IMG/VR virus record: IMGVR_UViG_3300030107_006644 | Span: 124,001 to 188,000 of that record | Length of the DNA stretch: 64,000 nucleotides | Strand: one strand, 5' to 3' | In this document: piece after piece, positions 12,554 to 63,872 of the stretch | Numbering within the stretch: the first letter of the stretch is position 1 | How the letters are laid out: each line of letters begins with the position of its first letter | The notes under the pieces: model-generated | The model's database searches: none | What the model was told of the DNA's origin: nothing | What the model saw: only the letters and a program-made list of their open reading frames with translations | Position numbers and translations under genes: made by a program

Positions 12554-13401
12554 ATGAGCAAAAAATTATTAAACGAATCTCAGGTTCGCAGATTTATGAA
12601 GCTGGCCACAATTGAGCCACTGGCTAACGGCTTCGTGCAGAGAGGTGGCAAGGTTCTGTTTGAACAGGACGAAATGGAAGACGAGATGGCAGATCCAGTC
12701 GGAGACGATGCACTGCCTCCCGGAGGCCCAGAAGAGCCTGCTGATATGATGGCTCCCGAAGATTTGGACGCTCCAGCCGGCCCCNNNNNNNNNNCCCCGC
12801 CGATTTTGACGTGGAAGAGCTTGTTATCGCAATTGCTGATGCAATTGAAGGTGTAACGGGTGTCGAGGTTGACGTTGAGGGCGAAGGCGGAGAAGAAGAG
12901 GGCGAAATGGCTCCTGTTGATGACATGGGCGGCATGGAAGATGATGCAATGGCTGCTGATATGGGTGGCGACATGGGCATGGAAGAAGAAGAGCCTCTCA
13001 TGGAACGCCGACTCCGCGCATATATTAACTCCCGTATTCGCAAAGTCATGGCTAAGGCTCTCACTGAAGGTGCAGATGCCTACGATCAGCCCGGCGCTTA
13101 TAAGAAAGAAGATGACGAAGACGAGGTGCAGGAAGAAGGTCATAAGCACATGTCTGGTGGTGAAGACATGCTCTCCAAGGGCACGAACGATGAGTTCGGC
13201 TCGGTCTCGAAAGACCCGCACCGTAGCAGCGCCGGTAAACACCATACCGGTGGTGAAGCCGCGCCAAAGTCTAAGCAGCATATGGGTGGCAACAACGCCG
13301 CACTTCCCCTTGAGGAGCAGATCACCGATGATCTACTTGAGCGCGTAACCCGTCAGGTTGCCGCCAAGCTCATGGCTGCTTCCAAAAAGCGTAGAAAGTA
13401 A
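12554..13401 (+). CDS. Acidic low-complexity protein, probably virion/scaffold related; one gene split by the N gap
   Basis: ORFs 12554.. and ..13401 are separated by 10 Ns (12785-12794); D/E/M-rich; starts MSKKLLNESQVRRFMKLA; CTATTTA upstream. Confidence 0.6.
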
Positions 13402-13458
13402 TTGAACGGATTCAAATACCGTGTTATAATAAAAGAGCCATGTTAGCATGGCTTTTTT
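13402..13458 (+). promoter_or_regulatory. Sigma70-like promoter followed by a hairpin and T tract
   Basis: TTGAAC(13402)-17 bp-TATAAT(13425); AGCCATG-ttag-CATGGCT-TTTTT at 13436-13458. Confidence 0.5.
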
Positions 13459-13910: not shown

Positions 13911-14546
13911 ATGAAGTTAGGAAAGAAAGACAACAAGCCTGAAGAGGAAGAGGTGGAAACGCCGGTCAACCCGGAGGAACTATCTGCGGTTTTGTTCGGG
14001 CCCGAAGATCTCGGTGTTCGTACAATTGGCCTTTGCGGAGACGTAGAGGAAGAGAAGGTCGGCGAAGTAATAGGGATGCTATTGGGTATGAGACAATCCG
14101 GTCTATTTTTGCCCGGGAATTCACCTTCGGAGGATCCTGTAGAGTTTCTGATCTCTACTTCTGGGGGGTCCGCACATGAGATGTTTGCACTGTACGATGT
14201 TATGCGGCTCATGCGAAATGACATGCCAATTCACACAATAGGGATTGGGAAAGTGATGTCGGCAGGTGTGGTTCTGTTAGCTGCTGGGACAAAAGGCCAG
14301 CGCAAGATCACGAAGAACTGTCGAGTTATGCTTCATAGTGTAATTGGGGGCAACATGGGATCCCTACACAGCCTAGAGAACGAAATGGATGAGATTAGAT
14401 GCACGCAGGAAAGATACATTGACGCGCTAGTGCAGGAAACTGATATGACAAAGCGTTTCTTGAAGAAGTTGATTGAGAGAAAGGTAAATGTGTACCTAAC
14501 GGCACAAGAGGCAGTAGAGTACGGAATCGCAGACGAGGTAGTATAG
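13911..14546 (+). CDS. clpP: ClpP-family protease proteolytic subunit
   Basis: ISTSGGS, GKVMSAG (catalytic Ser), LLAAGTKGQR, VMLH, YLTAQEAVEYGIADEV. Confidence 0.9.
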   Translation: MKLGKKDNKPEEEEVETPVNPEELSAVLFGPEDLGVRTIGLCGDVEEEKVGEVIGMLLGMRQSGLFLPGNSPSEDPVEFLISTSGGSAHEMFALYDVMRLMRNDMPIHTIGIGKVMSAGVVLLAAGTKGQRKITKNCRVMLHSVIGGNMGSLHSLENEMDEIRCTQERYIDALVQETDMTKRFLKKLIERKVNVYLTAQEAVEYGIADEVV

Positions 14547-21681: not shown

Positions 21682-24600
21682 ATGAAGAAGATTTACGAGG
21701 GCTGGCGACGTTATGTTAAGAGAGTTCAACTCGATGAGTCTCGCAAAGTTAAACGTTCGCAGCTCCAAGAAAATTTAGAAACACTGAACGAGATTTCTCG
21801 CGAAGTCTCAGACAGAATATACAAATGGATGCGCGATGCATCGGTCATGGACTATTCGTTTGATGAATTGTTTGACGGTAAGATGCGCATGGCTATGCCG
21901 TTCGACTCTGAAGATGCGTTGAACCTTAAGAAGGTCGTCCGCGCACTCAAGAAAGACGGTTGGCAAGCCGGCGAAATGGTTCCGTGGGAAGGGGGCATGC
22001 ACAGCGCCAACAAGTTCCCCACGCGCACGGTCAAACAGAAGAGACAAAGACTTGCAGACGAGGGCGGCGGCTTTTACGAAGAAGAGATCGAGGTCGCGGA
22101 TCTGGGCCTTGCCAAGAGTTATGAAAAGGAAATACCCGCAGGCCCTCGCAAGGGAGAGATCATCCAGCGTACAGACAAGCTAGGAATGGGCAAAGCAATC
22201 GCCAAACTTGTTAAGGAGAAAAAGCTAGATAAAGAGTTGCTGGATTGGTGGCTTAAGAAACAAACTTATTATACAAAAGACAGGAACTGGACAGAGATCG
22301 AGGCATTGTTCGCCAACACTGAAGTGGATTATACTGTCATTATCTCGCGCCATCCAGTCGATGTACTCCGTATGAGTGATATTGGCAGCATCAGATCGTG
22401 CCACAGCGAGGGGCATAGTCACTTCCAATGCGCTGTGGCAGAAGCTAGGGGTCATGGACCCATCGCGTACCTTGTTCCGACGACAGAGTATGATAAACTC
22501 ATGGCCGGCTTGTATGAGGAATATGATACTGCTGATGATCCTGAGTCGGCATACGATGTGAATCGATCCACCAGCAAATTACTTAAAGCACACGCAGTGT
22601 TCAAAGCAGAAGAATATATCAAAAATCACATTACGACCATACACTCTCGCTGGTCATCGATATACAAAATAATTGACAATATCAAAACTAGCAAGGACGA
22701 GGATATGCTTGAATTCGCAATCCAAGCAGTCTTCGATGCCGACCCTGTGTATGGAGAACTAGACCCTACCGTTCGCGGCTTGCTAACTGATCAAGCTGTG
22801 ATGGACGCTGTGGTTGCCAAAGCCGAGGGCAAGGAATGGTCGCTCCGTCCAGACGACACGCAGGAAGACGAACCTGACGAACCTGAAGAAATCGGAGACA
22901 TATCCAAGTTTGATGATAAGGAAATCTTCAGAGACGGGCAGCGCGGAGTTAAAGGTATCGTTGCAAAGGGTCGCGTCAGGTTTAGAAAATTTGAAGATAG
23001 CGACTCGGATATGCAATTTATTGCCCCAGAGCACAGAACATATGGTGCAGTTCCTCCCGGCTTTGTCAAGTCGATGGTCAAGTGGGCCGCAGAGAGCCAA
23101 GAGCAGACGTTTAGAGACAACGGTTTTCTAGGCCGCCACCCAGAGCAGAGAGGCTTGCACGCCCCCAACTGGTACAGCCTGACTAGATATGGAGGATCGT
23201 ATGAGGACACAGAAGATGGGGATGTGCTGACGGCACTCTTTCAGCACTATGACTCGGAATTTAGTTCTTATAAGCTGGGTTGGAATGTCGATCATCACAC
23301 CGAAGATGAGCAGGACAGCCTCGCCGAACAATATGAGCAGAGAGTCGACGATCTTAATGATTACGCGGCCAACAATTTGGGGCACTGCAGCACCCACGCC
23401 GAGGTTAATGATGACGGTGAAGAGCCCTATGTCTATGCCAGCGGAGACTTGTCAATCGAATTAAACCTTCTAGGCTGGGGCGGCTTGATGGAAGACTATG
23501 TTGGCACAAACTACTATCAATCAAGAGGCGCCGATGAGGACGGCGACCCATATATTATTCCAAAGAGTTGGGGCGGTGATTATCAAAAGAGAAGACAATT
23601 TGAAAGAGCAATCGAAGACAAGCTGGACATCTACTCGGAAGAGACGGATTGGGAGGTTAATGTTCAAAAAGGTGGAGCAATAGGTGAAAAGGGCCCAACA
23701 ACAGTTTTAGAAGTGCGATTTAGATTTAGCATGGAAGATGGTCACACTCCTGATGACTACGAGAACTTTATTGATTATCTTAAGTCCGATGTCGATGACA
23801 AATATGAGAACATTCGCGAAGGAATAAGGTTAGCACTGGTTGAAGAAGGGTACATGCTCAGAAACTACTTCGACAAGCTTAATTATGCAGCGACAGAAGA
23901 TGACGAGGGAGAAGAGATCGAGCCCGGCCCTACTCCAGCGGAGGAATTTGCTGGAAGTCTTCAGCACTTCGAATTCTATCCTCCATCGGATGATGGCGAT
24001 GGCGAAATGTTGTTCGTGTCTCGCGGGCCCGGAAAGGTTAATTATATTACAACACCCACAATGATGCCCGCCTCGCTCCGAAAGCATGACAGAGCAACAG
24101 GCTGGACGGTGGCTGATCTTGAGACAGCGTTTGGTGGCGAACGGTTCTCACTTGGATTCGGCACACCGCCGTCAGTCAAACACACAGGCCTTGGCATGCA
24201 TAAGATAGCCATGGCCCTTAGCGACATACAAGAGGAAGCGGAAGCATATGCCGGCAGGCAATTGTCGCTTGACTTTGGGGAGAGATACGAGGCACCACCC
24301 GATCAGGATGTACTTCCAGACTTTGCAAAGAATGTGGAGTTCATAACCGTTCTTGCTACACCAACTGCTTCACAACAAGCGGGACTACCAGAGACAGGCG
24401 ATAAGGACTCTAGACATTTAGGTTTTGGGATCAGGGTTAAGATTCTTTCTGTTGATTCTGAACGCGAAATTAAAGGTGCAATTGCGTTTATGGAATATGT
24501 CGATAAGGAAATTAGGACAATTGCCAGAGCATTTCAAAGTCTATGGGAACCCGCAATTGAAGAGGCTGAAGAAACAAAAAAGAAGGCGCAAGCCGCAGCA

Positions 24601-26910: not shown

Positions 26911-28949
26911 GTTATGAAAAGATAGCTAACGATTGGAAGAGGTTTATGTCCGAGGATCTGAATCCCGACATAGAGGCTGCAATAGATCGCTCAAGTTCAA
27001 CAGAGCCATCACCGGCAACGGAAGAGGACTTTGAATCGTATGCTGCTGTGGCCGATTATGTTAGTGGTCAAGGCCACGCTCCAGAGGGAATACTCGGCTT
27101 TGCCGATCAGTATGACGCTAGCAAATATCCCGATTGGAACGATAGGGTCGCTCGAACGGACGCTGAGCTGGAATCCCTGCCCGGTCTTGCTCCTCGCGAA
27201 ACAAGGTTGCCGGGCGTACATCGAGGTCCGTACAGGGAAGACGCAGCTATATTTAGCGCCGCTGAATCCGAGGCTGCAGCCGAGGAAGAAAGGTTACGTC
27301 AGCGTAGAGAAGAGAACGATTACTGGAGAGACCAGCACGCTATCTCGCAAGGCTATGAAAGCTGGAATGACATGGCAGAGAACGACGAAGATTTGAGGGC
27401 AACCCTGCAGGTCCATCAGGACCGTGAGGACGAGCGCGAGCGCAGACAAGCTTACGATGAGGAATCTATGGAACATATGATTGCTCTAGGAATGTATGAA
27501 CGCCCTGAAGAGCCGGAGCCGGGCCGTCGATATGGCTTTGAGGATTGGCGAGATGAAAACCCTAATGTTGCAAACGATTTCCGGGCCACAGAACAAGTTA
27601 TGGGCTCCTCTTTCCTGCAGACAGTCGACTGGGAAGGTATGTCCGATCAGGATTACGAGACGCTGCAAAGAGCGGAGTATTTGTTTTTGATGTTTGGAGG
27701 ATCCGGCGCCCGTCGAGGAAATGCCGGCCACGCTCATCATGAGGATTCGGAAGAAGCAGACTCAATTTTAAGAGAATTGTATGGCACAGTGTACGATGAG
27801 ATGCTTGAGCGAGAAGATTTGGGTAAAATGGTTCGACCTGTCACAACTAGGGTCAGGGATCGCGATACCGGCGTTGTCGAGAGAGTTAAGCAGTGGCAAG
27901 AGTGTTCGGATGATGATATGCAACAGCATCCGACGACTGACGGTGATCGCGCCGGTCGCGGAACAGGCTGCAGACCCCAACTTTACAACTCTGTTGACAC
28001 TAGGGATCGATACATAGACAATGCGATGGGGCAGAACAAGTATCACTGGAGTGCAGCAACGATCACCTTTCTCAACAGACATATGGCTCCGAACTTTCGA
28101 GGACATCAGGGACACTTTGCATACATGGGCGATGCTAAACGTGCTCTAGATTCTGAAGAGTACGAAGTAGGAGATTATGTAGCTCACCGGCCCGTCGATG
28201 ATGAAACCGGGACTACTCACGGACAAATAACAATAGGAGATGTCGGTGTGGGCTCTTCGTTATGTAGTCCAAGAGGAGGTACTGGTGATGGCTGGTCAAA
28301 TATTGGGTCTGCCAATCACTGTGATATTGTGATCGCAAAGGATGTAGATGGAAACCTTGTCACAATGGGGGGCAATATTGCTAACGGAAGACTGGGGATC
28401 CGCGTTTTTACTTCTGATGTTAGGGCATACCTCAAGCAGCACGGCAGGCAGCCCGGCGTAGATGTTGTTAGTTGGACTCGCCCTTCGATGGTGATCGCGC
28501 AAGCGCAACAACCCGGACCAGCCTCCGATGCATTGGCTTTAGCCGAACCTCTTCAAGAATCTAAGGACACAACAACTTTACGAACCGCAATCCGCTCTGC
28601 ACTTAAGTTATTAAAAGAAGATTATATTCAAAATGTTTACGAGGCCCAGTGTTCGCTCAACATTCATAAGAAAAAGGGTGGCGATAAAAAACAAACCTTA
28701 ACAGACATTCGTGGCATCCCCGGTGTTACAATTGTTAGTGTGGTTCCCGGTACAAGTCGAGAGATGGGGCATACCTTTATAACAACGCTGTCGGTTAAGT
28801 TTGAACTCAACAATAATCTGCCGCCGCGTAATTACATTAAGAGGGTTCTGGTTCCTCACTTACGAAGAGTAGAGGGCGTCAGCAATATTCAGGTAAAGCG
28901 AATAACTAAGTTATCTAATGTGCAGGGGGAAGAAGATTATCATGGCTGA
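26907..28949 (+). CDS. Probable virion-associated protein with DUF2272/CHAP-like domain and ACT-like C-terminal domain
   Basis: HWSAATITFL, VGDYVA, HCDIVI, MGGNI; C-terminal LTDIRGIPGVTIV. Confidence 0.6.
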   Translation: MSYEKIANDWKRFMSEDLNPDIEAAIDRSSSTEPSPATEEDFESYAAVADYVSGQGHAPEGILGFADQYDASKYPDWNDRVARTDAELESLPGLAPRETRLPGVHRGPYREDAAIFSAAESEAAAEEERLRQRREENDYWRDQHAISQGYESWNDMAENDEDLRATLQVHQDREDERERRQAYDEESMEHMIALGMYERPEEPEPGRRYGFEDWRDENPNVANDFRATEQVMGSSFLQTVDWEGMSDQDYETLQRAEYLFLMFGGSGARRGNAGHAHHEDSEEADSILRELYGTVYDEMLEREDLGKMVRPVTTRVRDRDTGVVERVKQWQECSDDDMQQHPTTDGDRAGRGTGCRPQLYNSVDTRDRYIDNAMGQNKYHWSAATITFLNRHMAPNFRGHQGHFAYMGDAKRALDSEEYEVGDYVAHRPVDDETGTTHGQITIGDVGVGSSLCSPRGGTGDGWSNIGSANHCDIVIAKDVDGNLVTMGGNIANGRLGIRVFTSDVRAYLKQHGRQPGVDVVSWTRPSMVIAQAQQPGPASDALALAEPLQESKDTTTLRTAIRSALKLLKEDYIQNVYEAQCSLNIHKKKGGDKKQTLTDIRGIPGVTIVSVVPGTSREMGHTFITTLSVKFELNNNLPPRNYIKRVLVPHLRRVEGVSNIQVKRITKLSNVQGEEDYHG

Positions 28950-29679
28950 TTATTATGATAAGTGGAAACGCTTTATAGCAGAGCGAAAACAGGCGCCGCA
29001 CCAAATCTACTGTGATATGGATGGCGTTTTGGTAGACTTCGTTCGCGGTGCTCTTGTATCTATTAACGAGGATGTTAATAACGCCAAGCTTTCCGACAAG
29101 AAAGAGACAGGCGGGATGACTGATCTTGGCCATCTTAGACGCGCCATGAAACGAGAAGGTGTGGACACCGTAACCGAAGAGCATATTGAAAAATTTGCAG
29201 GTGGACACTCTAAAGTGAGAAAATACGCCATAAGACATATGTATGCCAGCTTGTCTGATGATGTAGACTTCTGGGCTAATTTGCCTTGGATGGAGGGTGG
29301 TCGTGAGTTGTGGGACTCGATCAAAAAGTATGAACCTTATATTTTAACTGCGCCTATGGGCCCCGGCTCTGAAGAGGGCAAGAGAAGGTGGATTCGCAGA
29401 AATCTTTCTCCGTCGCCCAAAAAGATATTCATGTCTCACGACAAGTTTAAGTGGGCAACAGATAGCGGTGGAAACGCCAATATCTTAATAGACGACTTTA
29501 TGACCAATATTGGCCCATGGAGAGAGAACGGTGGCATAGCTGTCCATCACGATGCAACCGACCTGCAGGAAACTTACGCCGAACTGTTAAGAAACGGCAT
29601 TGAGGTATTGCGAGCCCCCGAGAGTCATGAGGAAGATCCCATGTCGTCTATGCACGATGACGACGAGGATGTTATATAA
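28942..29679 (+). CDS. HAD-superfamily 5'(3')-deoxyribonucleotidase-like protein
   Basis: IYCDMDGVLVDF, FWANLPWM, ILTAP, GKRRW, ILIDD...NIGPW...GGIAVHH. Confidence 0.85.
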   Translation: MADYYDKWKRFIAERKQAPHQIYCDMDGVLVDFVRGALVSINEDVNNAKLSDKKETGGMTDLGHLRRAMKREGVDTVTEEHIEKFAGGHSKVRKYAIRHMYASLSDDVDFWANLPWMEGGRELWDSIKKYEPYILTAPMGPGSEEGKRRWIRRNLSPSPKKIFMSHDKFKWATDSGGNANILIDDFMTNIGPWRENGGIAVHHDATDLQETYAELLRNGIEVLRAPESHEEDPMSSMHDDDEDVI

Positions 29680-53450: not shown

Positions 53451-56400
53451 ATGAGTAAATTAACAAGAAAACAGCTTGAAGAATTAATCCACAAGAAACT
53501 GATGGAAACTTCGATAGCTAGTACAAATCCCAGAAGCGCTCGTAGCGCTAGCATGCCGCCGAGAGCAAGGAATCAGGCAGATCAACGAAATCCTGCCGAT
53601 GAAGAAGTGCTTAGCGAAGAAGTTGGCGAGACAGAAGAGTTCGAAGCAGAAGAAACATCTGGTGGCGATGCAATTGCTATGGCAGATCCTCCCAGCGAAT
53701 CGGAGATTGAGGATTATAGGCCGGAATTACCGGCCGAGCGACCTCCAGCAGAACCAGATTTGGAGAGATTTAGAATATCCCGTGGTGGAGGCGGTGGAGG
53801 ATCTGGCGGGAGCCAGCAAGTCTTTTCGCGTAGAGCAGAGCTTACCCCGCAAGCGCGAGATTGGCAGCGTTATGATGCAGCAATCGAACGTCGAAACACA
53901 ATTTTAGATACCTTCGGTCAAGCTGAAAGTCCGGAAGCGGCTGCTGAACAGTTTCTTCGCGGATTGGAAATAAGTCAAGAGGATATTCAGGGCGCATTCG
54001 GAGGGCAAGATTTTAGATATCTCCGCACCGCGTTAGAAGATCAGACTGAAGACATCTGGGGAGGCATCAGTGATATGCGCACCGCGTTCGCTAGTCAGAT
54101 AAATCAAGAAAGTAGTCCGACAGATAGGCAAGGGCGATCTCAATATATTGCAAATCCGGATATGCAAGCACTGATGGCAAAAATAGAACAGGGCAGCCCT
54201 CTTGATTCTAATGATACCGAACTTATTACCAGCCGCATGCGGACTTTAGACGTCGGAGATACTCAAGCTTCGCCGATGGGAGCATGGGACTTCTACGAAC
54301 AAGAAGGCCTTACTGTGGCCGGAGAGGACGGCCGGATCGAAATGCGGTCGCAACAAGATATGACTCCTTTGCAAAGTGCAACAAAAAATGTCATCCTAAA
54401 CGCCATGGCTGGTGGAGATTTTCAGCCTACCATTGGAATTGAATCAGTGCCAATGGCCCAGTATGGCGGCGGGCCCGGGCTGGCGGTCACTAGAGCCGTT
54501 GTACCTCCGGGTTCTGAAGAGTATGAACACTTGCAGAGAGTGCACGATCAAGTTCGAAGACAGGGGATTCACCCCACAGAAAGACAGGTTGGTACAGATT
54601 CTGAAGGCCGGCCAATTCTTTTAGCTATGGCGGATCTTAACCCTGAACACTTCGCATCCACTCGCCAGTCGAATCAAAACGCGCATACGATTGCCGCTGA
54701 GCGTGCCGGCTGGGGTGCGGAAATGGAAGACCTCCGGCAATACGCGGACGAACTCAATGATCAGATTAGATCAACAAACCGTAGAGGTCAAGCAACAGAG
54801 CCGCTTCGACAAGGCACTTCTATTGCGGATACCGACTTTGTTCTCCCGATGGACTTTTGGCATCCAAATATGAACAGGCCGAGAACCCGCGAGGAACTCG
54901 AAGGAGTAATGACCTCGCGAATACAAAGACGAGCAACGCGGGATCGACGGCAGATCCGCAGACGAGCGAAGATCAGACGTGGGCAGGCTGCTGCAGCAGA
55001 TGAGGGCGGGTGGGCACAACAAGCTTATACGTCAATGGATCGGGCGAGGGCAGCCGCTGGGACTGAAAGCGGGGCACGCACTATGGCCTCTGTGGGTATT
55101 AAGCGCGATGATGATAAATTTAATGAATCCCTCGACTATTCCAATTTTAAACCTTGGACGTCGCAAGGATTTGCAAATCTTGTAATGGCTGAAAGAAACC
55201 ACCATAAGAATAAAATTGACAGACAAATTGCAGAAACTCAGGAACAAATTCGCACAAAACACAGAGATCGACGAGCATTAGAGAGCAAAGTGCGCAGAGT
55301 TTTAGAACAAAAACTAAAAAAAAAGCTGAATGAAGCAGTTCCATATGGACAGCAGTTTGTACCCGGTACACTACCCTACGACTATGGCGCGGGTGGAGAG
55401 GGCAATTGGGCCCAGCCGGCGAACTGGCAGCCGACAACTGTAGCCGATACTGGAGGTGGGGGTGCGCCGGCAGCCGTCACCCCACCGCCAAGGGGCAGGG
55501 CCTCGCACCCATTAAGCGATGTAATTGGCGATAACCAAGAACGCGGAAATCTATTTAGACGATGGGTGAATGCAAATTATGGAGATTCGCTAGCAGGAGT
55601 TTTTGAAACAGACCAGAGAACTGCGGGACTTACCAACCGTCGTACCGGGCAACCAGATCGCAGCCTAGGCGGGAGCGGAAACCCCTCTAACGCCCACATG
55701 CAAGCTGCTTGGGATGCCTATGGCGACCAATTTATTAGAGCCATGTCCGCTACCGACGAAGGCGCAGATGTACATCCTAATTTAAGACCGTCTGAGGGAG
55801 ACGCTGGATATTTTAGCCAATTCGAAATGCCTACGCTCACTCCTCCGTCTGAAATTGAAACGCCCGAAACCGTAACACACACTTTTGGACAAGCCGATCT
55901 TGAGCAGCATCAAGCTGCGCTAGATAGCGATGATCAATTACCTCCAAGCTGGAGTCAGCAAAACCAACAGACGAGTCATAGTCCCGCTTATAGGGACAGA
56001 ATGCTTAGATCCCGAGGCGGTCGGACATTTGGCCAAAAATTAGCAGACCCATGGCGTAGAGTTGGTCAACAAGTACGCGACACTGCAGGAACATATATAG
56101 ATCCAGAAGATACTACGAACGCCGGCGTAGCTAGAAACGTTGCGCGCGGTATTGGCGGGGCTGCAACTCTTGGCCTTGTTGGACATCACCAGAGTACGGA
56201 AGCTAGCCCGCTTGGAGTGGTGGGCTCAACGGCAAGAGCTATTGGTAGTAATATAGGTACCGCATTGACTGAGCCTGTTAGGGCTATTGGCAATATCGGC
56301 ACAAGACAGCGTATATCTGGATTTGACGCCGAGACTGGCCGGCGAACAGACACACCAGCTGGAACTCGCACAGATGTTGGCGCTGAGCTTAGTCGTATCG

Positions 56401-56651
56401 GTACTCACTTGAATCCTTTTGACGCCCAATCAGAACGTAGTCGCGCAACAGATCGTGCTGAAGCGAGCGCGGAAAGAATGGAAAGAATTGGGGGCCAAGA
56501 AGGTATAGATAGTATAACAGATATGATCAGTCAGCGCCGAGCAGAGCGTGGTGTGCAAGAAGGCAAAACTAAAAGTAGAATAGAAACGAAAGGTCTTTTG
56601 ACAGAAGAACAACGCCACAGGTTTATAAAACTAGCATTAATTAAAAGTTGA
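53451..56651 (+). CDS. Large probable virion-associated/internal protein
   Basis: 1066 aa; MSKLTRKQLEELIHKKLME start, KLNE linker, LLTEEQRHRFIKLA end; two CTATTTA upstream. Confidence 0.7.
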   Translation: MSKLTRKQLEELIHKKLMETSIASTNPRSARSASMPPRARNQADQRNPADEEVLSEEVGETEEFEAEETSGGDAIAMADPPSESEIEDYRPELPAERPPAEPDLERFRISRGGGGGGSGGSQQVFSRRAELTPQARDWQRYDAAIERRNTILDTFGQAESPEAAAEQFLRGLEISQEDIQGAFGGQDFRYLRTALEDQTEDIWGGISDMRTAFASQINQESSPTDRQGRSQYIANPDMQALMAKIEQGSPLDSNDTELITSRMRTLDVGDTQASPMGAWDFYEQEGLTVAGEDGRIEMRSQQDMTPLQSATKNVILNAMAGGDFQPTIGIESVPMAQYGGGPGLAVTRAVVPPGSEEYEHLQRVHDQVRRQGIHPTERQVGTDSEGRPILLAMADLNPEHFASTRQSNQNAHTIAAERAGWGAEMEDLRQYADELNDQIRSTNRRGQATEPLRQGTSIADTDFVLPMDFWHPNMNRPRTREELEGVMTSRIQRRATRDRRQIRRRAKIRRGQAAAADEGGWAQQAYTSMDRARAAAGTESGARTMASVGIKRDDDKFNESLDYSNFKPWTSQGFANLVMAERNHHKNKIDRQIAETQEQIRTKHRDRRALESKVRRVLEQKLKKKLNEAVPYGQQFVPGTLPYDYGAGGEGNWAQPANWQPTTVADTGGGGAPAAVTPPPRGRASHPLSDVIGDNQERGNLFRRWVNANYGDSLAGVFETDQRTAGLTNRRTGQPDRSLGGSGNPSNAHMQAAWDAYGDQFIRAMSATDEGADVHPNLRPSEGDAGYFSQFEMPTLTPPSEIETPETVTHTFGQADLEQHQAALDSDDQLPPSWSQQNQQTSHSPAYRDRMLRSRGGRTFGQKLADPWRRVGQQVRDTAGTYIDPEDTTNAGVARNVARGIGGAATLGLVGHHQSTEASPLGVVGSTARAIGSNIGTALTEPVRAIGNIGTRQRISGFDAETGRRTDTPAGTRTDVGAELSRIGTHLNPFDAQSERSRATDRAEASAERMERIGGQEGIDSITDMISQRRAERGVQEGKTKSRIETKGLLTEEQRHRFIKLALIKS

Positions 56652-58055: not shown

Positions 58056-61000
58056 ATGCGTAAGCCAAAAATTATTAACAATACAGAGGCTGATCACTCT
58101 AGCCTTATCGAATTAGCAAATCACTTTTTTCCTTTTGCTCAAAAGCAGATGGGATTTTCCGAACCCGTCACCATAGTTTTGATCTCAGACGAAGAGAACG
58201 GCGCAGACCACTTAGGAAAAACAGGATATTACAACCCTTCAGACAACAACATAGGATTGTATACTGACAGTAGGCATCCAAAAGATATTTTAAGATCTCT
58301 CGCGCATGAGTTGGTGCACCATACTCAAAATGGCAAAGGTATGTTTAATTTAGATATCGATCTTGAGCCCGGCTATGCTCAGAATGATGAACATATGCGC
58401 GAAATGGAACGTCAAGCCTATGAGCTTGGGAACATGTGCTTCAGAGACTGGGAAGATAACAACAAAGAAGAGATTCGCAAATGGGATCTTAAGGAATCTA
58501 TTCGTCAAGAACTTAGAAAAAGAATGTCTGGAACGCCGGAGATCTTAGAAGAAGGTCCTCGATGGGACAAGTTTAAAGGCGCAATGGGCTCGGCTGGCAA
58601 AGGCGTGTGGGGTGGGGTCAAGGCTGCACCGGGCGCGACTTGGAGAGGGATAAAACATTCTTGGACGGGAGATCCGGTAGCCATGAGTGCAAAACCTGCT
58701 CGGGGGCCCAAGGGAGAGTATATTCCGCGCGGCGGCCCGGGCAAGGAAAAAAAGCAATTTTTCACCGAAGAAGAACAGACCACGAGCGAATTTCCCTCCC
58801 CATTTCAGCAAAAAATCACTGAAAAGTCTGATGCAGAAGCATGGGCTAAGTGGATTATGGATTTTCAAGAACCAGCTTTAATCAAAAAAGCATTTTATAC
58901 AGTGATATACGATGAAATTCTCGGTAACGATGGGGAACCGGTCAAATTTAAGATGAATAAGAAGCTCGAAATTGCCCAGCATTACACGGCAATGTTTTAT
59001 GGACCGGATGGGCCCGGGCACGAAGAGGCACCACCTGCTGAAAGCCCAGTAGAAACTGCAGCAGATACTGCCGATGCCGATGCGGAAGAATCACCAGCAA
59101 CAGCAGAGGTCGAGGATGACTCCAGTATCTATGATGTGTCTAGAGTCATGACGCCCGGTACCGACTATGAAGATCCCATCGAGACAGGATATGGAACTTC
59201 CGTAGATGATCCAACTGCTGGAGGACTTGGTGGAGAGTGGAGAGAGCATAAGGAAATGAACAGTATGAACAAAAAACTCAGTATACGAGAAGAACTAAGA
59301 CTTCGAAGTCTTATCGCCGAAGCAACACAGAGAGTAATGCAAAAACAAAGACTGCTGAGGGAGAATTCTCAAGAAGAGTTTGGCACATCTGATGTGACTG
59401 TCGACGAGCCCTCTGCACACGGAGGTCTTGAAGATCGCGGAGAATGGACAAACCCTGTTACTGATGTTACACATGAAAACACAAGAGATGATGCTGCGGC
59501 CGATCTTCAGTTCGACACATCGACTGCTTTTGGTACATCGTATACCCAAGGCGCCGGCGGTGCACCAGTAGGAAGCTGGCTAACCAATCCAGCAATGAGA
59601 CATCCAACGGCATCTTGGACAGGGAGGCAAGAAAAGATCGCGCGGACCTTAGCCGGCGAGACTGTGACCAATCGCGACGGCAGCGTCTTTGAAATTGGCC
59701 GTGGAGATCAGAGGTTCGTTGATCGTCTGCAAAGCGGCGATTTGATGGGTACCGATTTGGGCATGGTTAGACGTGGAGAACGTATTAATCCAAATGCTTG
59801 GCGCGAAGCCTTATTGGAGGCTGGAGACGTGGGTCGTGCACTTTATGAGCAGCACGATGCCGAAGGCTGGATTAACGAAGGTGAAATTAAAGATTTTTGG
59901 CAACCAGCTTACGAAAGAGAATGGCTGTCGCAATATCGTGCGAACAACGATTATCATCGTGAAAGATTTGCTAGGCAAGAGGGGTTTCAAAGCTGGAACT
60001 CCCTGCAGGCTGCTGGTGGAGCCGACCTGTTTACAGTTACGGCTGAAGATATTGATGCTGAAATGCCTACTCGATTGGAATGGGCACAGCACCACTTAGG
60101 GCTTGGAGATATTAAATCTGCCTCTGGTGCCGGCGGACTTGCAGGCGATCCTCGATTTGATATGAGGGTTAACCCCAATCTCACACAGCAACAGGCAGAG
60201 CGCAATATGCGTATGTGGGGATATGAGCCGGAATACGTAGATCTTCCCGATGGTAGAAGGATTCCCATGGCTCTGACGAGAGAACAGGCCGACGAACAAA
60301 TTGCAGAAAACGAGTGGGGAGTCACCACGTTCTTGCGGCGAAATGTTGCAGATCCAATTGTTCAGGATATCGCTCAACAAGGCCAATTTGCTCACGATGC
60401 AATATTGCGCCCGATGTTTGGCAACGTGCAAAGCGGAGAATTTATACCCCTCTGGGCTGGCTGGGGCCTTGGTGATGATCCTATAAACCAATGGGGCCGG
60501 GATGACGTATATGGAAGCGGCCGTCAGTTCGGCGCATCGATGCCGGGAACATATAGAGATCCTCGAATGCAATCAGTTTATGCAGAATACTATGGTCCAG
60601 AAGACGCTCCTAGCGAAGATATGATTGGAAAAATGAAGCCTATGGATGAATGGAATATTCCCAACAGGGGCGCGGTGATTATGAATTCTCTTAACATGCC
60701 CGAATCATGGAAGTATGCCGCGATGTATTATGGTGGCGGTGCTGCGATGAGAGGTCTTGGGGCTTTGCGCGGCATGCCAGCAGCTGCCGGCGGAGCCGGT
60801 GCATCTGGTGGAGGCGCGGCTGGAGGTTGGCTTGGTGGCTCCGTTCCAAAATGGCTTGGGCAAATTCCCGGGCGAACACCGGGGCTATGGCGAGCACCGG
60901 GCGCCGGAGCGGTTGAGTCAGGCCTTGTTAACCTAGGTTCTCGTTTGGGACCGTGGGGAACAAGGTGGGGAACAACGCTCGGCCGATGGGGAGGATACGG

Positions 61001-63872
61001 CGCCGGTGCCGGTGCGGCCGGTAGTTTGGGAATGGGCGCGCTGGGTGTCGGTGGACATTTTGGAAGAAGCCTGATGGACGACGGGCCCGGGCTCAATCAA
61101 CTGTTTGGTATCGGAAGCGGTGTAAATTGGTTAGGAGATCAGTTAGACCCGGGCAGATCGGGCTGGGGAAGAGAAGGTTGGACAAGCGATGCTAATTTTG
61201 GCCAACCACAGCCTAAATATGAGCGCGATGAAAGCGGTGAATTTGTCAGAGATGAAAGAGGTCGACGAGTAATTGCGCGGGACGAAAACGGACTACCACA
61301 ATATGAAACAAACGAAGACGGAAGTTTAGTTTATGCGCATGATCAGTATCGTTCACTTTTAAGCCAGCCGGTGGGCAACTTGGCCGGGCTTGGAGATACA
61401 GAATATCAGCCATGGGAAAGTCCGTATGAGGCAAGGTGGGCAAGAGAAGCAGATCTTGGCGGAATGGCTGCAGCTTTTAATGCTGAAGATATACAACAAG
61501 CGGAGATGGCAACAGGTTTGCGCGCTGCTGATGCCCAAGTTCAATCATTGGAGACACAACTTCTTGGAATGGCAATGGAAAATGTGGCGGACGCGCCGGC
61601 AGATCTTGTTAATCCTGATGCTGCCATGGCATTTGCAAGCGACATGGGAGTTGACAACGCTGAAGCTGTCTCGGATCAAGCCCAAGAATATGTAGAGCGA
61701 ATTGAACGTCTTAAGCAAAACTATGGATTAACTAATGCTAGCGAAGCTGATGTTGGGCGTGTGTCCGAAGAACAAATGGCCATACTTCAGCAAAATCCGC
61801 AAAGTTTAGCAGAGTTTGAATCTGGAATGTCAGAATTAAGTGCCGGGTGGAATCAGGAAGTGACCGCACTGCTTGGACCTCAAGCAGGAAGAGAGGCCGG
61901 CGGCCAATATGCTTTTGACTTTGGAGTTACCGGTACGGGTGGAAACCAATATAGAACACCAAATATGTCTCCGGCTGCAATAGAAGATTTACTTATGAAC
62001 ATTTCGTCTAACAGGGTGTCAAATGGAAACTATACAATACCTTCGGGAATTCCATTGCCAACATTGGAAGTTACCAATGAAAATGGTGAAACAGTGGAAG
62101 TTACTGCACATTCAGACCCACATCGATGGTGGAACGCTCTTCATCAAATGCAGCAAGAGAGATTTAACAGTAATTTAGATCAGGCAATTGCAGGAGACCT
62201 CGATGAAATAATTGGCGAACGTTCTGCAGCCGGTAGTTTGGCTCGATTTATCACCGGCCAAGATGGCTTCCTAATGACTCAGGGTTCCGAGGCGCCAGTT
62301 GAAGCTGGATTGGAACAGGGCGAACGCGTTGGCCGGCGAGAGATGCTAGAAACCTATTATAATACAAGAGTCGAAGAGCATGTTGCACAGATTACAGAAA
62401 ACCGGGTTCAACAGATGGTACAATACGGTAACATGAGTGAAGACGAAGCTCAGCTACAACTTCGTGGTATGCGGGATGAGATCGTAAGAGAAGCAACTGG
62501 ATATGCTATAGATGATGTAACATTAAAAAGAATTCTTACTCCTATTCCTCCGAGTAGTCAAGACGGCACTTGGAACCCTCTAGCTGGAATAGGACAGTTT
62601 GGGTTAGGTTCTGACAATCCCGATTCGGCTGGGCCTGAAGCTGAAGCATTTAACGCCGATATGACTGTCATAGCTATGCTAAGCATGCCTTCTCATAGAG
62701 ACGCAATTCTGTCCCACGAAGATGGTCTTGGAAAAGTTGCACAACTAGCGTGGGATTACGGATTTGCTAAAAACAATCCACAATTTATAGAACAGATTTT
62801 GCCCGGACCACAATATGCACAACTGAGAAGAACAATTTCCATGGCAGCATATAGAAAGTCGCAAACTCTTCTTGCGTGGGATACTGCCGGTGAGGCGACA
62901 AATCCGAGAACGGGAGAAAGGTTGGGTAACATCGATGTTCTTTCAGAAGAATCACAGCAAGCTTTTAGCCGACTCAGGAATATTAACTGGGGACACTTTG
63001 GCTTAGTAGAGGGCTCTGATGGTTCGGCGAATCTGGGCGCATGGAGAGATTACGCTGGAAACGGACATGATCTTGACCGGCTTGGTCCGGTCGGGAACGC
63101 CACAGCAACAAATCCTGATGGCGAATTAACCGTTAACGCACAAGAAATGGTTGCACTGAATGAAGAGTTTAGCGATCTCAGCGATCTAGACCGACGAACG
63201 CCGTTGTATTCTGCTGCCTACAATGCTTTGCCGGAAGAAACACAAGACAGAATATACCAATATAGCGTAACTAGATCAGATATAATAGGTCGACAATATA
63301 AAAGGCGTGGAGAACTCCTGCAGGACGAAGGGCATGCGATCCCAAGAGCAAGACAAATGGCTGGAGCATATTACGTAGCTAGTTCCGGAGATCCGGTCTT
63401 AGATCAATTAAGAGGCGTAGGGTTCCCATCAGCAGCTATTGCAAATCAGGTTGCATTAAGACTTGTAGGCGGACAACCATTGCAGGACATTCAACTAGCT
63501 ATAAACCCGGATGGGCGAGCCGCTGCAGCGATTGAGGCAGGGCGAGGAGATTTGAATGGCCCCATATGGGTAGCAGGGGAAACGCTAGACGAAGCCCGAC
63601 AAAGTGGACAAACATTGCTGTGGGCCCCTAATCTTGAAAACTCAGCTGGAATGGGCGGTGCACTACCGCAAGGCGCAACAATCAGATTCGGCAGCAACCA
63701 GACGGGAGGCGAAACTACGCAAGCTATAGAAGTTCCGCAGGCGCCCGGGGCTGGAGCTAGCGCTGAAGATCAGGCCGAATATCGTCGACAATTGCAAGAT
63801 GCAGCGCGACAACAGGTGGGCGCACAGGGAGCCCCTAGACGCAGGGGTCGAGTTGTTGTACCGGCGAGATAA
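58056..63872 (+). CDS. Giant probable virion-associated protein with N-terminal HExxH zincin-like domain and Gly-rich segment
   Basis: GYYNP...RHPKDILRSLAHELVHHTQN...MERQAY; linkers LKESIRQEL and SIREELRLRSLIAE; CTATTTA upstream. Confidence 0.75.
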   Translation: MRKPKIINNTEADHSSLIELANHFFPFAQKQMGFSEPVTIVLISDEENGADHLGKTGYYNPSDNNIGLYTDSRHPKDILRSLAHELVHHTQNGKGMFNLDIDLEPGYAQNDEHMREMERQAYELGNMCFRDWEDNNKEEIRKWDLKESIRQELRKRMSGTPEILEEGPRWDKFKGAMGSAGKGVWGGVKAAPGATWRGIKHSWTGDPVAMSAKPARGPKGEYIPRGGPGKEKKQFFTEEEQTTSEFPSPFQQKITEKSDAEAWAKWIMDFQEPALIKKAFYTVIYDEILGNDGEPVKFKMNKKLEIAQHYTAMFYGPDGPGHEEAPPAESPVETAADTADADAEESPATAEVEDDSSIYDVSRVMTPGTDYEDPIETGYGTSVDDPTAGGLGGEWREHKEMNSMNKKLSIREELRLRSLIAEATQRVMQKQRLLRENSQEEFGTSDVTVDEPSAHGGLEDRGEWTNPVTDVTHENTRDDAAADLQFDTSTAFGTSYTQGAGGAPVGSWLTNPAMRHPTASWTGRQEKIARTLAGETVTNRDGSVFEIGRGDQRFVDRLQSGDLMGTDLGMVRRGERINPNAWREALLEAGDVGRALYEQHDAEGWINEGEIKDFWQPAYEREWLSQYRANNDYHRERFARQEGFQSWNSLQAAGGADLFTVTAEDIDAEMPTRLEWAQHHLGLGDIKSASGAGGLAGDPRFDMRVNPNLTQQQAERNMRMWGYEPEYVDLPDGRRIPMALTREQADEQIAENEWGVTTFLRRNVADPIVQDIAQQGQFAHDAILRPMFGNVQSGEFIPLWAGWGLGDDPINQWGRDDVYGSGRQFGASMPGTYRDPRMQSVYAEYYGPEDAPSEDMIGKMKPMDEWNIPNRGAVIMNSLNMPESWKYAAMYYGGGAAMRGLGALRGMPAAAGGAGASGGGAAGGWLGGSVPKWLGQIPGRTPGLWRAPGAGAVESGLVNLGSRLGPWGTRWGTTLGRWGGYGAGAGAAGSLGMGALGVGGHFGRSLMDDGPGLNQLFGIGSGVNWLGDQLDPGRSGWGREGWTSDANFGQPQPKYERDESGEFVRDERGRRVIARDENGLPQYETNEDGSLVYAHDQYRSLLSQPVGNLAGLGDTEYQPWESPYEARWAREADLGGMAAAFNAEDIQQAEMATGLRAADAQVQSLETQLLGMAMENVADAPADLVNPDAAMAFASDMGVDNAEAVSDQAQEYVERIERLKQNYGLTNASEADVGRVSEEQMAILQQNPQSLAEFESGMSELSAGWNQEVTALLGPQAGREAGGQYAFDFGVTGTGGNQYRTPNMSPAAIEDLLMNISSNRVSNGNYTIPSGIPLPTLEVTNENGETVEVTAHSDPHRWWNALHQMQQERFNSNLDQAIAGDLDEIIGERSAAGSLARFITGQDGFLMTQGSEAPVEAGLEQGERVGRREMLETYYNTRVEEHVAQITENRVQQMVQYGNMSEDEAQLQLRGMRDEIVREATGYAIDDVTLKRILTPIPPSSQDGTWNPLAGIGQFGLGSDNPDSAGPEAEAFNADMTVIAMLSMPSHRDAILSHEDGLGKVAQLAWDYGFAKNNPQFIEQILPGPQYAQLRRTISMAAYRKSQTLLAWDTAGEATNPRTGERLGNIDVLSEESQQAFSRLRNINWGHFGLVEGSDGSANLGAWRDYAGNGHDLDRLGPVGNATATNPDGELTVNAQEMVALNEEFSDLSDLDRRTPLYSAAYNALPEETQDRIYQYSVTRSDIIGRQYKRRGELLQDEGHAIPRARQMAGAYYVASSGDPVLDQLRGVGFPSAAIANQVALRLVGGQPLQDIQLAINPDGRAAAAIEAGRGDLNGPIWVAGETLDEARQSGQTLLWAPNLENSAGMGGALPQGATIRFGSNQTGGETTQAIEVPQAPGAGASAEDQAEYRRQLQDAARQQVGAQGAPRRRGRVVVPAR

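What the first reader, a model, noticed from the sequence alone, without database searches (positions are those of the whole stretch)
12554..63872. Shared targeting/cleavage motifs suggest processed polyprotein cargo in the capsid
Seen: otherwise unrelated late proteins share short amphipathic motifs. Three consecutive genes begin with W(K/R)R(F/Y): MKKIYEGWRRYV (21682), MSYEKIANDWKRFMSE (26907) and MADYYDKWKRFIAE (28942). Inter-domain linkers recur: LREAIRKAI, LREAIRGAIKQKLDE, LKDAIREAI, LEEAIRQAI, LRTAIRSALKLLKE, LKESIRQEL, SIREELRLRSLIAE, VRRVLEQKLKKKLNE. LLNESQVRRFMKLA (12554 N-terminus) matches LLTEEQRHRFIKLA (53451 C-terminus). Established: the T4 prohead protease cleaves internal proteins after (L/I)-x-E. 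Inference: these are packaging tags and cleavage sites that release separate enzymes (M23, CHAP-like, zincin and even a HAD nucleotidase) from head-packaged precursors.
Basis: partly seen in the sequence, partly recalled or inferred. Interest (0 to 1): 0.65.

Follow-up and report, generated by a model that had tools for sequence, protein, structure and literature searches.

The report
Capsid-targeting-like leader peptides, marine jumbo phage
Many unrelated proteins of this uncultured 205-kb T4-like marine phage start with the same 14-residue peptide, which looks like phage T4's capsid-targeting and cleavage tag, so the phage may pre-pack a changeable set of enzymes in its head; this has not been shown by experiment.

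Summary
The N-terminal W(K/R)(K/R)(F/Y) motif is not limited to three genes. Twelve proteins of the 205,517-bp phage genome start with a 14-residue leader, M-K-L-L-x-E-N-W-R-K-F-(L/I)-x-E, and it never occurs internally here. It is conserved as protein, not as DNA, and sits on unrelated enzymes: HAD nucleotidase, NUDIX, kinase-like, nucleotidyltransferase-like, M23 and DUF2272.

The strict pattern hits more than 119 IMG/VR contigs. In those ORFs the unconstrained positions 12 and 14 are L/I (87%) and E (85%), which is the T4 gp21 cleavage motif. The genome encodes a gp21-type protease and a gp23-type capsid protein. All 7 near-complete leader-bearing relatives also have the protease.

A close relative carries in-frame fusions with internal leaders in front of its HAD and NUDIX domains.

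The assembly gap is false: one 277-aa ORF crosses it.

The tag idea is well supported by inference. The polyprotein idea is not shown for this window. A ClpP-linked role is a rival. There is no proteomic proof.

The parts
12504..12512 (+). Promoter-like motif (A/T)(A/T)CTATTTA, about 50 nt upstream of the 12554 gene. Further copies lie at 21646-21654, 53424-53432 and 58042-58050, upstream of the 1746-, 1066- and 1938-aa genes.
   Evidence: ACTATTTA occurs 24 times on the + strand and 3 times on the - strand. The longer motif occurs 22 times on the + strand, 14 of them 14-90 nt upstream of a start. These include head and tail genes outside the window (g66413, g70807, g90689, g99004).
12554..13401 (+). 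One ORF of 277 aa across the false gap. It is an acidic, Met/Gly/Asp/Glu-rich protein. Its N-terminus MSKKLLNESQVRRFMKLATIE is the 'class 3' motif (12566-12607). It ends in an amphipathic helix and a basic tail.
   Evidence: The first residues MSKKLL.E match the N-terminus of the phage's gp21-like protease. Orthologues in G003, G007 and L058, and a protein of Flavobacterium phage immuto, carry the same N-terminal motif.
12782..12795 (.). False assembly gap: 10 N plus a 4-base duplicated overlap. The true sequence lacks these 14 letters.
   Evidence: tables 4 and 8: X1 record 1 (6191 nt), X2 record 5 and X4 record 15 all bridge the site with a 14-letter deletion.
13911..14546 (+). ClpP-family protease paralogue. 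It is not the head protease. A second copy lies outside the window at genome 197854-198468.
   Evidence: PF00574, E = 1e-30; ClpP in 8 of 8 complete leader-bearing genomes.
21682..26910 (+). 1742-aa conserved giant protein. It has a W-type leader without the cleavage half (MKKIYEGWRRYVKR, 21682-21723). An M23 peptidase domain lies at about 26041-26343. LxEAIR-type helices lie at 25201-25227, 25279-25323 and 26716-26742. A fourth, at 26848-26874, is at the very C-terminus.
   Evidence: 89 homologues of about 970-2000 aa, with W8..F11 kept at the N-terminus. More than 20 of them end in an ..LREAIRRAVLKRL-type helix; the helices are conserved in G003 where the flanking sequence is not.
26907..28949 (+). 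680-aa protein. Its leader is MSYEKIANDWKRFMSE (26907-26954, W at residue 10). It has a DUF2272-like domain (about 28023-28385), the helix LRTAIRSALKLLKE (28578-28619), and a C-terminal domain (about 28602-28946).
   Evidence: (DUF2272 E = 1.4e-5, below Pfam's cut-off). The C-terminal domain is the one that ends the G003 homologue of the 1746-aa protein.
28942..29679 (+). 245-aa HAD 5'(3')-deoxyribonucleotidase. Its leader is MADYYDKWKRFIAE (28942-28983), ending in the same FIAE as T4 IPII and IPIII.
   Evidence: AF2 shows a leader helix at residues 2-16, a lower-confidence linker, and a core with pLDDT 96-98.
53451..56651 (+). 1066-aa protein of unknown function. It has an aliphatic (class 2-like) N-terminus, MSKLTRKQLEELIHKKLME. 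Its C-terminal motif LLTEEQRHRFIKLA (56595-56636) matches the 12554 N-terminus.
   Evidence: No homologue in G003 or G007. No Pfam, PHROG or PDB match.
58056..63872 (+). 1938-aa protein. It has an N-terminal HExxH (zincin-like) module (HELVH at 58305-58319). The helix LKESIRQEL (58488-58514) sits at the end of the only part conserved in relatives (residues 6-159). A second helix lies at 59280-59321.
   Evidence: The G003 homologue (2273 aa) ends in ..NLESVIREQIIAKLKGAK.
63973..64000 (+). Start of the next gene (285 aa, runs off the window). It has a class 2-like N-terminus, MSKKTKLNRRQLEALVRSKLQE.

Best explanation
The shared N-terminal peptides are capsid-targeting propeptides of the T4 kind.

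Proposed mechanism (inferred, not shown):
- A 14-residue amphipathic helix carries two hydrophobic 'targeting' positions, 8 and 11 (W and F/Y in the W type, L and I in the aliphatic type). These dock the protein onto the scaffolding core while the prohead assembles.
- Positions 12-14, (L/I)-x-E, are the site where the phage's gp21-family serine protease cuts off the tag. The cargo is left free inside the head and is ejected with the DNA.

Cargo: a fast-changing cassette set of enzymes (nucleotidase, NUDIX, kinases, nucleotidyltransferase, RNA-repair-type HAD and CPD enzymes, cell-wall hydrolases).

The related LxxAIRxxI helices, found at C-termini and at module junctions of the giant proteins, are read as the same kind of core-binding helix. 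They are mostly not read as cleavage sites.

Shown here: the motif, its strict N-terminal position, its selection at the protein level, its spread, the conserved L/I12 and E14, and the T4-type head genes.
Inferred: binding to the core, packaging, cleavage and ejection.
For: 1. Twelve strictly N-terminal copies, no internal copy.
2. Codons differ synonymously and the upstream DNA is unrelated, so selection acts on the peptide.
3. The carriers are unrelated folds. In relatives the carriers include HAD_SAK_1, Pkinase, AAA_33, Zeta_toxin, NUDIX, tRNA_lig_CPD, NT5C and RNase_T.
4. A DNA pattern that fixes only residues 1-11 hit more than 119 IMG/VR contigs, against about 0.05 expected by my own estimate. 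In 150 such complete ORFs the free position 12 is L/I in 130 and position 14 is E in 128 (p = 3e-88 and 3e-111).
5. gp21 cleaves after L/I-X-E. In the T4 CTS, residues 4 and 7 target and residues 8 and 10 are needed for processing (PMC9026906). T4 IPII and IPIII start MKTYQEFIAE. This maps residue for residue onto W8, F11, L12 and E14.
6. The genome has Peptidase_S77 (E = 2.9e-31) and Gp23 (E = 6e-61). The protease keeps the GELDHP and GISSRGLGS motifs. The capsid protein has a T4-like delta domain with ..LLRE|AST.. aligned to T4's ..FLTE|AEI...
7. S77 is present in 7 of 7 leader-bearing records that are at least 90% complete.
8. HAD homologues in HTVC008M and phage immuto lack the leader, so it is an add-on.
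9. In G003, internal leaders that keep LTE or LKE precede the HAD and NUDIX domains in fused ORFs.
10. The same motif sits at the C-terminus of the 878-aa protein and is conserved in G003. T4 Alt also has propeptides at both ends.
11. A class 2-type motif heads a conserved head-module gene next to the protease (g73251 and its G003 and G007 orthologues).
12. About half of the leader proteins have no homologue in a relative whose core genes are 70-80% identical. This resembles the T-even internal-protein loci.
13. Only 7 hits in 596 Gb of prokaryote genomes, all on short MAG contigs.
14. A promoter-like motif is shared with structural genes.
Against: - No virion proteome, N-terminome or expression data exist for this uncultured clade. 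No cultured phage carries the W leader.
- The residue after E14 is mostly E or D (76 of 167 ORFs). The T4 sites checked here, and this phage's own predicted capsid site, have Ala there.
- ClpP co-occurs with the leader as well as S77 does (8 of 8 genomes). ClpP is absent from the two leaderless T4-like phages tested, which do have S77. The head protease alone therefore does not predict the leader.
- Some leaders lack the cleavage half (1746-aa family, g60194, g122424).
- T4 internal proteins are small and basic. Here the presumed cargo includes proteins of up to about 1,750 aa.
- A 7-position pattern match to the T4 CTS cannot prove homology.
Confidence: 0.55

Rival explanations
1. The leader is a recognition tag for regulated proteolysis or remodelling by the phage's own ClpP (with a host or phage unfoldase). 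It would give timed removal of early enzymes, not packaging.
For: - ClpP (PF00574) is in 8 of 8 complete leader-bearing genomes, often in two copies. It is absent from HTVC008M and immuto, which lack the W leader.
- M-K-L-L-L-x5-F fits the loose ClpX 'N-motif 2' (Met-basic-phi-phi-phi-X5-phi). I recall this motif from Flynn et al. 2003 and did not check it here.
- ClpP and a GroEL homologue lie in the window next to the class 3-tagged protein.
Against: - Conserved W8, E6, L/I12 and E14 are not explained by that motif.
- Copies kept at a C-terminus and at internal junctions do not fit a tag that needs a free N-terminus.
- The co-occurrence is confounded by clade: 8 related genomes against 2 outgroups.
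- The aliphatic leader also occurs in phage immuto, which has no ClpP.
Confidence: 0.1
2. The leader is a docking helix for some other phage-encoded hub, such as a multi-enzyme nucleotide or RNA-metabolism complex, a membrane site or the chaperonin. The proteins are gathered in the infected cell and are not packaged.
For: - The carriers are mostly nucleotide- and RNA-acting enzymes.
- AF2 shows a separate amphipathic helix on a flexible linker.
- The motif works at either terminus and at junctions.
- The motif is found only in viruses.
Against: - It does not explain why the helix ends in the exact gp21 cleavage motif in about 85% of copies.
- It does not explain why a head-module gene next to the protease carries the aliphatic version.
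- No candidate hub has been identified.
Confidence: 0.18
3. One reading: the giant window proteins are polyproteins, and the internal LxEAIR-type 'linkers' are cleavage sites that release separate enzymes.
For: - Four copies flank the M23 region of the 1746-aa protein, and they are conserved in G003 where the flanking sequence has diverged.
- LRE|A is also the predicted capsid-protein cleavage site.
- Fused ORFs with internal leaders exist in G003 and G007.
- The helix at 58488 marks the end of the conserved zincin-like module.
Against: - Only one recognisable enzyme domain per giant protein.
- Glu is in the leader register in only 1 of 6 linkers.
- In homologues the helix is mostly the extreme C-terminus, where nothing downstream could be released.
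- L/I-x-E is frequent by chance in these K/E/L-rich proteins.
- A PSSM from N-terminal seeds does not separate the linkers from ordinary helices.
Confidence: 0.12
4. The shared peptides are only a by-product of recombination or gene duplication (a shared 5' cassette, or a paralogue family) and have no function of their own.
For: - Cassette turnover occurs between relatives.
- One protein's only match in G003 is the leader itself.
- T-even internal-protein loci are thought to shuffle through their conserved leader. This is from my own knowledge (Repoila et al. 1994) and was not checked here.
Against: - Synonymous codon differences and unrelated upstream DNA.
- The peptide is conserved across hundreds of diverged contigs on unrelated folds.
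- Free positions 12 and 14 are under strong constraint.
Confidence: 0.03

Closest known systems
Capsid targeting sequence (CTS) of phage T4 internal proteins IPI, IPII and IPIII, removed by the gp21 prohead protease
   Same: - A short N-terminal peptide is the only thing shared by otherwise unrelated proteins.
- The layout is the same: aromatic, x, x, aromatic, L/I, x, E.
- The phage has gp21-, gp23- and gp20-type head genes.
- The carrier genes form variable cassette loci.
- HAD's ..KRFIAE compares with T4's ..QEFIAE.
   Different: - The leader is 14 residues, not 10, with an extra MKLL-x-E start and Trp in place of Tyr.
- Two flavours exist (W type and aliphatic type).
- Copies also occur at C-termini and at junctions.
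- The cargo is mostly recognisable enzymes and very large proteins, not small basic proteins.
- The residue after the Glu is usually acidic.
- Nothing has been shown by experiment.
Propeptides of head and ejection proteins in giant phages (phiKZ gp175, SPN3US gp245 substrates)
   Same: - A gp21-related protease cleaves after Glu in many head-internal proteins, which are later ejected.
- Large numbers of packaged proteins, including enzymes (PMC9026906; abstracts of PMC5694885 and PMC10052503).
   Different: - To my knowledge, those propeptides have no single conserved targeting peptide.
- To my knowledge, their cleavage motif has a small residue at P3 (recalled as S/A/G-x-E; not read here).
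- This phage is on the T4 side (Pfam Gp23 and Peptidase_S77 hits are direct).
T4 Alt and gp21 terminal propeptides; T4 prohead core proteins gp67 and gp68
   Same: - Alt is processed at both ends, as proposed for the 878-aa protein, which has the motif at both ends.
- T4 gp67 is a small protein with an ..IDLIKEEK.. helix and an acidic tail. It resembles the small class 2 proteins and the acidic 277-aa protein.
   Different: There is no detectable sequence homology beyond these short stretches.
Encapsulin cargo-loading peptides
   Same: A short terminal peptide directs unrelated enzymes into an HK97-fold shell.
   Different: Those peptides bind the shell protein itself, are usually C-terminal and are not cleaved. 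No similarity was seen. This is an analogy only.

Membership tests
T4-type capsid targeting sequence / gp21-processed propeptide | Sits at the extreme N-terminus of proteins that are otherwise unrelated. | tested here: met
   12 of 12 HMM hits are N-terminal, on HAD, NUDIX, kinase-like, NTase-like, M23 and DUF2272 proteins.
T4-type capsid targeting sequence / gp21-processed propeptide | Two targeting residues three apart, directly followed by an L/I-x-E processing site. | tested here: met
   W8 and F/Y11 are followed by L/I12-x-E14. In 150 complete ORFs from IMG/VR, L/I12 occurs in 130 and E14 in 128. T4 rule from PMC9026906. Exceptions: the 1746-aa family, g60194 and g122424.
T4-type capsid targeting sequence / gp21-processed propeptide | The phage encodes a gp21-family (Peptidase_S77) prohead protease and a T4-type head. 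| tested here: met
   PF03420 E = 2.9e-31; PF07068 E = 6e-61; portal phrog_213. S77 is present in 7 of 7 near-complete leader-bearing records.
T4-type capsid targeting sequence / gp21-processed propeptide | The tagged proteins are incorporated into proheads or virions. | not testable with these tools
T4-type capsid targeting sequence / gp21-processed propeptide | The tag is removed by cleavage C-terminal to the Glu. | not testable with these tools
   Needs N-terminomics or an in vitro protease assay.
T4-type capsid targeting sequence / gp21-processed propeptide | Sequence homology to the T4 CTS MKTYQEFIAE. | tested here: inconclusive
   Only the pattern is shared. The peptide is too short for a statistical test of homology.
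Viral polyprotein processed into separate enzymes | One ORF encodes several enzymes, separated by protease sites. | tested here: not met
   In the window M23, DUF2272 and HAD are three genes. Each giant protein has at most one recognisable enzyme domain. The architecture does exist in relative G003 (719-aa and 471-aa ORFs).
ClpXP N-terminal degron (N-motif 2) | Met-basic-phi-phi-phi-X5-phi at a free N-terminus (rule recalled from memory). | tested here: inconclusive
   Most of the 12 leaders fit the pattern by eye. ClpP co-occurs in 8 of 8 genomes. Conserved internal and C-terminal copies, and conserved W8 and E14, are not expected for this tag.
Peptidase_M23 (1746-aa protein) | Match to the M23 domain above Pfam's cut-off. 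| tested here: met
   PF01551, 35.4 bits against a cut-off of 28.7, residues 1458-1558. PDB M23 chains match at E = 6e-6.
DUF2272 (the 'CHAP-like' domain of the 680-aa protein) | Match above Pfam's cut-off. | tested here: not met
   25.4 bits against a cut-off of 27, E = 1.4e-5. It is a lead only. The CHAP relation was not tested.

The most novel reading that the evidence does not exclude
The 14-residue leader, in its W-type and aliphatic versions, is a sequence-readable address label. It marks the whole injected proteome of a widespread, uncultured clade of marine T4-like jumbo phages. That proteome would be a rapidly exchanged arsenal of pre-packed enzymes: nucleotidases, NUDIX hydrolases, protein and polynucleotide kinases, RNA-repair modules, zincin-like proteases and wall hydrolases. 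They would act in the host before any phage gene is expressed, probably in takeover and counter-defence. The label would work at N-termini, at C-termini and at junctions of fused modules.
Probability: 0.35. Interest if true: 0.82.

Novelty: new variant of a known kind. Interest (0 to 1): 0.66.

Why it matters
If the reading is right, one short peptide lets anyone list, from sequence alone, the proteins these abundant ocean phages inject along with their DNA. In T4 this class of proteins holds anti-restriction and host-takeover factors, and it is otherwise invisible in metagenomes.

It would extend the T4 CTS principle from a few small basic proteins of coliphages to dozens of enzymes in uncultured marine phages. 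It would point to new candidate counter-defence enzymes, such as nucleotide-signal hydrolases and RNA repair enzymes. It would also offer new targeting tags for loading foreign proteins into capsids.

If it is instead a ClpP-linked or hub-docking tag, it is still an undescribed virus-specific sorting signal.

Tried and rejected
No verdict.
- **Function of the giant proteins.**
  - PHROGs and Pfam gave nothing for the 1066- and 1938-aa proteins.
  - phmmer against PDB gave nothing for them.
  - An AF2 model of residues 1-720 of the 1746-aa protein (pLDDT 75) had no PDB match at E <= 0.001.
  - It matched only uncharacterised viral proteins in BFVD, best E = 1e-20.
- **C-terminal domain of the 680-aa protein.** jackhmmer and a regex against the phage's own proteome found only the protein itself.
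- **Class 2 HMM.** hmmsearch recovered the 8 N-terminal seeds but none of the internal 'linkers'. A PSSM placed the linkers within the background of ordinary helices. I therefore do not treat them as equivalent to the leaders.
- **Literature.** Full-text search for the motif strings, and for CTS in marine phages, found no description.
- **Cultured relatives.**
  - tblastn of a leader protein and of the 589-aa protein against the 50,697 GenBank phage records found no match.
  - The nearest capsid proteins are about 45% identical.
- **DNA-level element** (promoter, RNA or recombination box) as the cause of the shared start: rejected because of synonymous codon variation.
- **A false positive to note.** The LKQIIKE pattern hit in HTVC008M appears to be the N-terminus of its UvsX-like recombinase (my reading of the translation). 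Single aliphatic-pattern hits are therefore not diagnostic.
- **tRNA scan** of the window: none found.

Full report
**Where the window lies.** The window is bases 124001-188000 of a single 205,517-bp IMG/VR virus record that CheckV rates as complete. Nearly all genes are on the + strand. Outside the window the genome carries a T4-type head module:
- large terminase;
- portal (phrog_213);
- a Peptidase_S77 (gp21-family) prohead protease at genome 72634-73254 (PF03420, E = 2.9e-31);
- a scaffold-like protein;
- a Gp23-family major capsid protein (PF07068, E = 6e-61).

The protease keeps the GELDHP and GISSRGLGS motifs of T4 gp21. The capsid protein has a T4-like N-terminal delta domain, in which ..LLRE|ASTMAGGD aligns with T4's ..FLTE|AEIGGD. 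The nearest cultured capsid proteins are only about 45% identical: Flavobacterium phage immuto, Microcystis phage Mel-JY01 and Rhodothermus RM378. Sequencing runs that hold this DNA are marine metagenomes.

**The gap.** I tested this first in importance, as asked. Contigs of three runs span 12785-12794: X1 (possibly the source), X2 (a different study) and X4 (a variant strain). All three lack 14 letters there, namely the 10 N plus a 4-base duplicated overlap. Removing 12782-12795 joins the two sides in frame. The result is one ORF, 12554..13401, of 277 aa. The 648-aa homologue in the close relative G003 is colinear with both sides of the gap.

The W motif is much more than three genes. Twelve proteins of the genome begin M-K-L-L-x-E-N-W-[KR]-[KRQ]-[FY]-[LI]-x-E.
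- An HMM of this leader finds exactly these 12 in the six-frame translation, all at N-termini. The next hit scores 8.3 bits.
- Codons differ synonymously and the upstream DNA is unrelated, so the peptide is what is conserved.
- The carriers are unrelated: an M23 giant protein, a DUF2272-like protein, a HAD nucleotidase, NUDIX, a kinase-like protein, a nucleotidyltransferase-like protein and several proteins of unknown function.

**Spread of the leader.** I estimate about 0.05 hits by chance.
- In the 150 complete ORFs, the free position 12 is L/I in 130 and the free position 14 is E in 128, against background frequencies of 0.14 and 0.087.
- Of the top 120 marine homologues of the HAD nucleotidase (1329 at E <= 1e-5), nearly all start with the leader. 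The same enzyme in Pelagibacter phage HTVC008M and in phage immuto does not.
- The Pfam families behind the leader in relatives include HAD_SAK_1, DUF2608, Pkinase, AAA_33, Zeta_toxin, PGDYG, NUDIX, tRNA_lig_CPD, NT5C and RNase_T.
- In 596 Gb of prokaryote genomes the pattern occurs 7 times, always on short MAG contigs of unrelated phyla. I take these for mis-binned phage DNA.
- Each complete relative tested has 1-9 strict copies, all but one on one strand.

**A second leader.** Eight proteins here begin with an aliphatic version, for example MKLTRKQLEQQVRE and MKIDRKTLMRILRE. In relatives this is the very common MKLTKSQLKQIIKEEL. It has the same skeleton as the W leader: a hydrophobic residue at 8, a basic residue at 9, hydrophobic residues at 11 and 12, and Glu at 14. 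It heads a conserved gene right next to the protease (g73251, with orthologues in G003 and G007). It also occurs in phage immuto. T4's core protein gp67 has a similar ..IDLIKEEK.. stretch.

**Comparison with T4.**
- gp21 cuts after L/I-X-E.
- The 10-residue CTS of IPIII is enough for packaging.
- CTS residues 4 and 7 matter for targeting, and residues 8 and 10 for processing.
- Asp at residue 10 blocks cutting but not targeting.
- The CTS is the only part shared by diverse internal proteins (PMC9026906; PMC3012670).
- T4 IPII and IPIII start MKTYQEFIAE.

Y4, F7, I8 and E10 of T4 map onto W8, F11, L12 and E14 here. The HAD protein even ends its leader in FIAE. On this reading, the 1746-aa family keeps W8 and F/Y11 but not L12 or E14 in many members, so it would be targeted but not trimmed.

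**The internal 'linkers'.** The LxEAIRxAI strings resemble the aliphatic leader.
- They are absent from 32 kaa of enzymes and structural proteins apart from one hit.
- They are conserved in G003 where the surrounding sequence is not.
- Among 89 homologues of the 1746-aa protein, more than 20 end in such a helix, for example ..LREAIRRAVLKRLNA.
- In G003 the homologue switches, exactly at this helix, to the C-terminal domain that ends our 680-aa protein.
- The 878-aa protein outside the window has the W motif at both ends, and so does its G003 orthologue.

- Only one of the six has Glu in the leader register.
- A PSSM built from N-terminal seeds does not separate them from ordinary helices.
- A helix at the very end of a protein cannot release anything downstream.

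I read them as binding helices at termini and module junctions. I do not read them as proven cleavage sites.

**Polyproteins.** In this window the three enzymes are separate genes. The relative G003 has core genes 70-80% identical to ours, and it has two fusions:
- a 719-aa ORF: leader, zincin-like module (HEYGH), acidic linker, internal leader KIFNNWRKFLTE without Met, then HAD;
- a 471-aa ORF: leader, zincin-like module (HETAH), leader, then NUDIX.

G007 has a 284-aa ORF with a second, complete aliphatic leader inside it. If the protease cuts after the Glu, the fused and unfused forms would give the same mature enzymes.

**Cassette behaviour.** Ten or eleven of the 21 leader proteins have no homologue in G003. 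One matches G003 only through its 16-residue leader.

**The rival.** ClpP is in 8 of 8 complete leader-bearing genomes. It is missing from the two leaderless T4-like phages, which do have S77. This could be a clade effect, but it keeps a ClpP-linked role alive. The conserved E14 and W8, and the internal and C-terminal copies, speak against a free-N-terminus degron.

**Other checks.**
- AF2 shows the HAD leader as a helix (residues 2-16) on a lower-confidence linker in front of a core with pLDDT 96-98.
- A strand-biased motif, (A/T)(A/T)CTATTTA, lies just upstream of several head and tail genes and of the 12554, 21670, 53451 and 58056 genes. This hints at co-expression with the structural genes.

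**Verdict.**
- Observation: confirmed and widened.
- Tag-plus-cleavage reading: the best explanation (about 0.55), resting on inference from T4.
- Polyprotein reading for this window: weak.
- Novelty: a new variant of a known kind.

Noticed in passing
window 12782-12795: The assembly gap is false. Three independent contigs close it by dropping 14 letters (10 N plus a 4-base duplicated overlap), leaving one in-frame 277-aa ORF.
   Followed up: yes
window 12504, 21646, 53424, 58042 and 18 other + strand sites in the genome: The strand-biased motif (A/T)(A/T)CTATTTA occurs 22 times on the + strand, and its core ACTATTTA 24 times on + against 3 on -. It lies 14-90 nt upstream of many structural genes and of the tagged giant genes. 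It is a candidate late promoter, and it is not the T4 TATAAATA.
   Followed up: partly
window about 33267-42609, also 52572 and 57732: A tandem swarm of at least 12 small ORFs (55-110 aa) that all begin with (M)K(V/I)GDLV. This is a third shared N-terminus, probably part of a small beta-barrel fold. None has a Pfam match.
   Followed up: partly
window about 42000-50000: An island of higher G+C (0.52-0.54 against about 0.45) with flat or reversed GC skew. It holds a zinc-knuckle protein, a MoxR-type AAA_5 ATPase (46841-47908) and a DUF2201 metallopeptidase/VWA partner (47995-49224). It may have been acquired separately.
   Followed up: partly
window 13911-14546 and 17275-18849; genome 197854-198468: The phage encodes two ClpP paralogues and a GroEL-type chaperonin. 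The window copy of ClpP seems to lack the Asp of the catalytic triad, while the second copy has Ser, His and Asp (judged by eye).
   Followed up: partly
L004:4009-6642 (genome 115009-117645): The 878-aa paralogue of the 1746-aa protein has the W leader at its N-terminus and a second copy, ..RMYKKWRSFIK, at its very C-terminus. The G003 orthologue keeps both.
   Followed up: yes
G003 4844-7003 and 38915-40330 (loci L145, L147): These are in-frame fusions of two tagged modules with an internal leader between them. The upstream modules are HExxH zincin-like domains with no homologue in our phage.
   Followed up: yes
window 29783-30598 and 30619-31653: Two genes right after the tagged trio start with lipoprotein-like signal peptides and have no leader: a trypsin-like protease (PF13365) and a weak VWA protein. 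G003 keeps both.
   Followed up: no
window 56683-57153 and 57162-57605: An RNaseH-like protein (PF04308, E = 2e-25) and a 147-aa protein with an HECGH motif lie between the 1066- and 1938-aa genes.
   Followed up: no
L167-L173 (GTDB MAG contigs): Seven short contigs binned into Woesearchaeota, Undinarchaeota, Opitutia, Isosphaeraceae, Niabella and Gammaproteobacteria MAGs carry the exact phage leader. They are probably mis-binned phage DNA.
   Followed up: no
L174:1489-1620 (Pelagibacter phage HTVC008M): An apparent UvsX-like recombinase (my reading of the translated N-terminus) starts MANFLKQIIKE. A single aliphatic-pattern hit at an N-terminus can therefore be a coincidence.
   Followed up: yes
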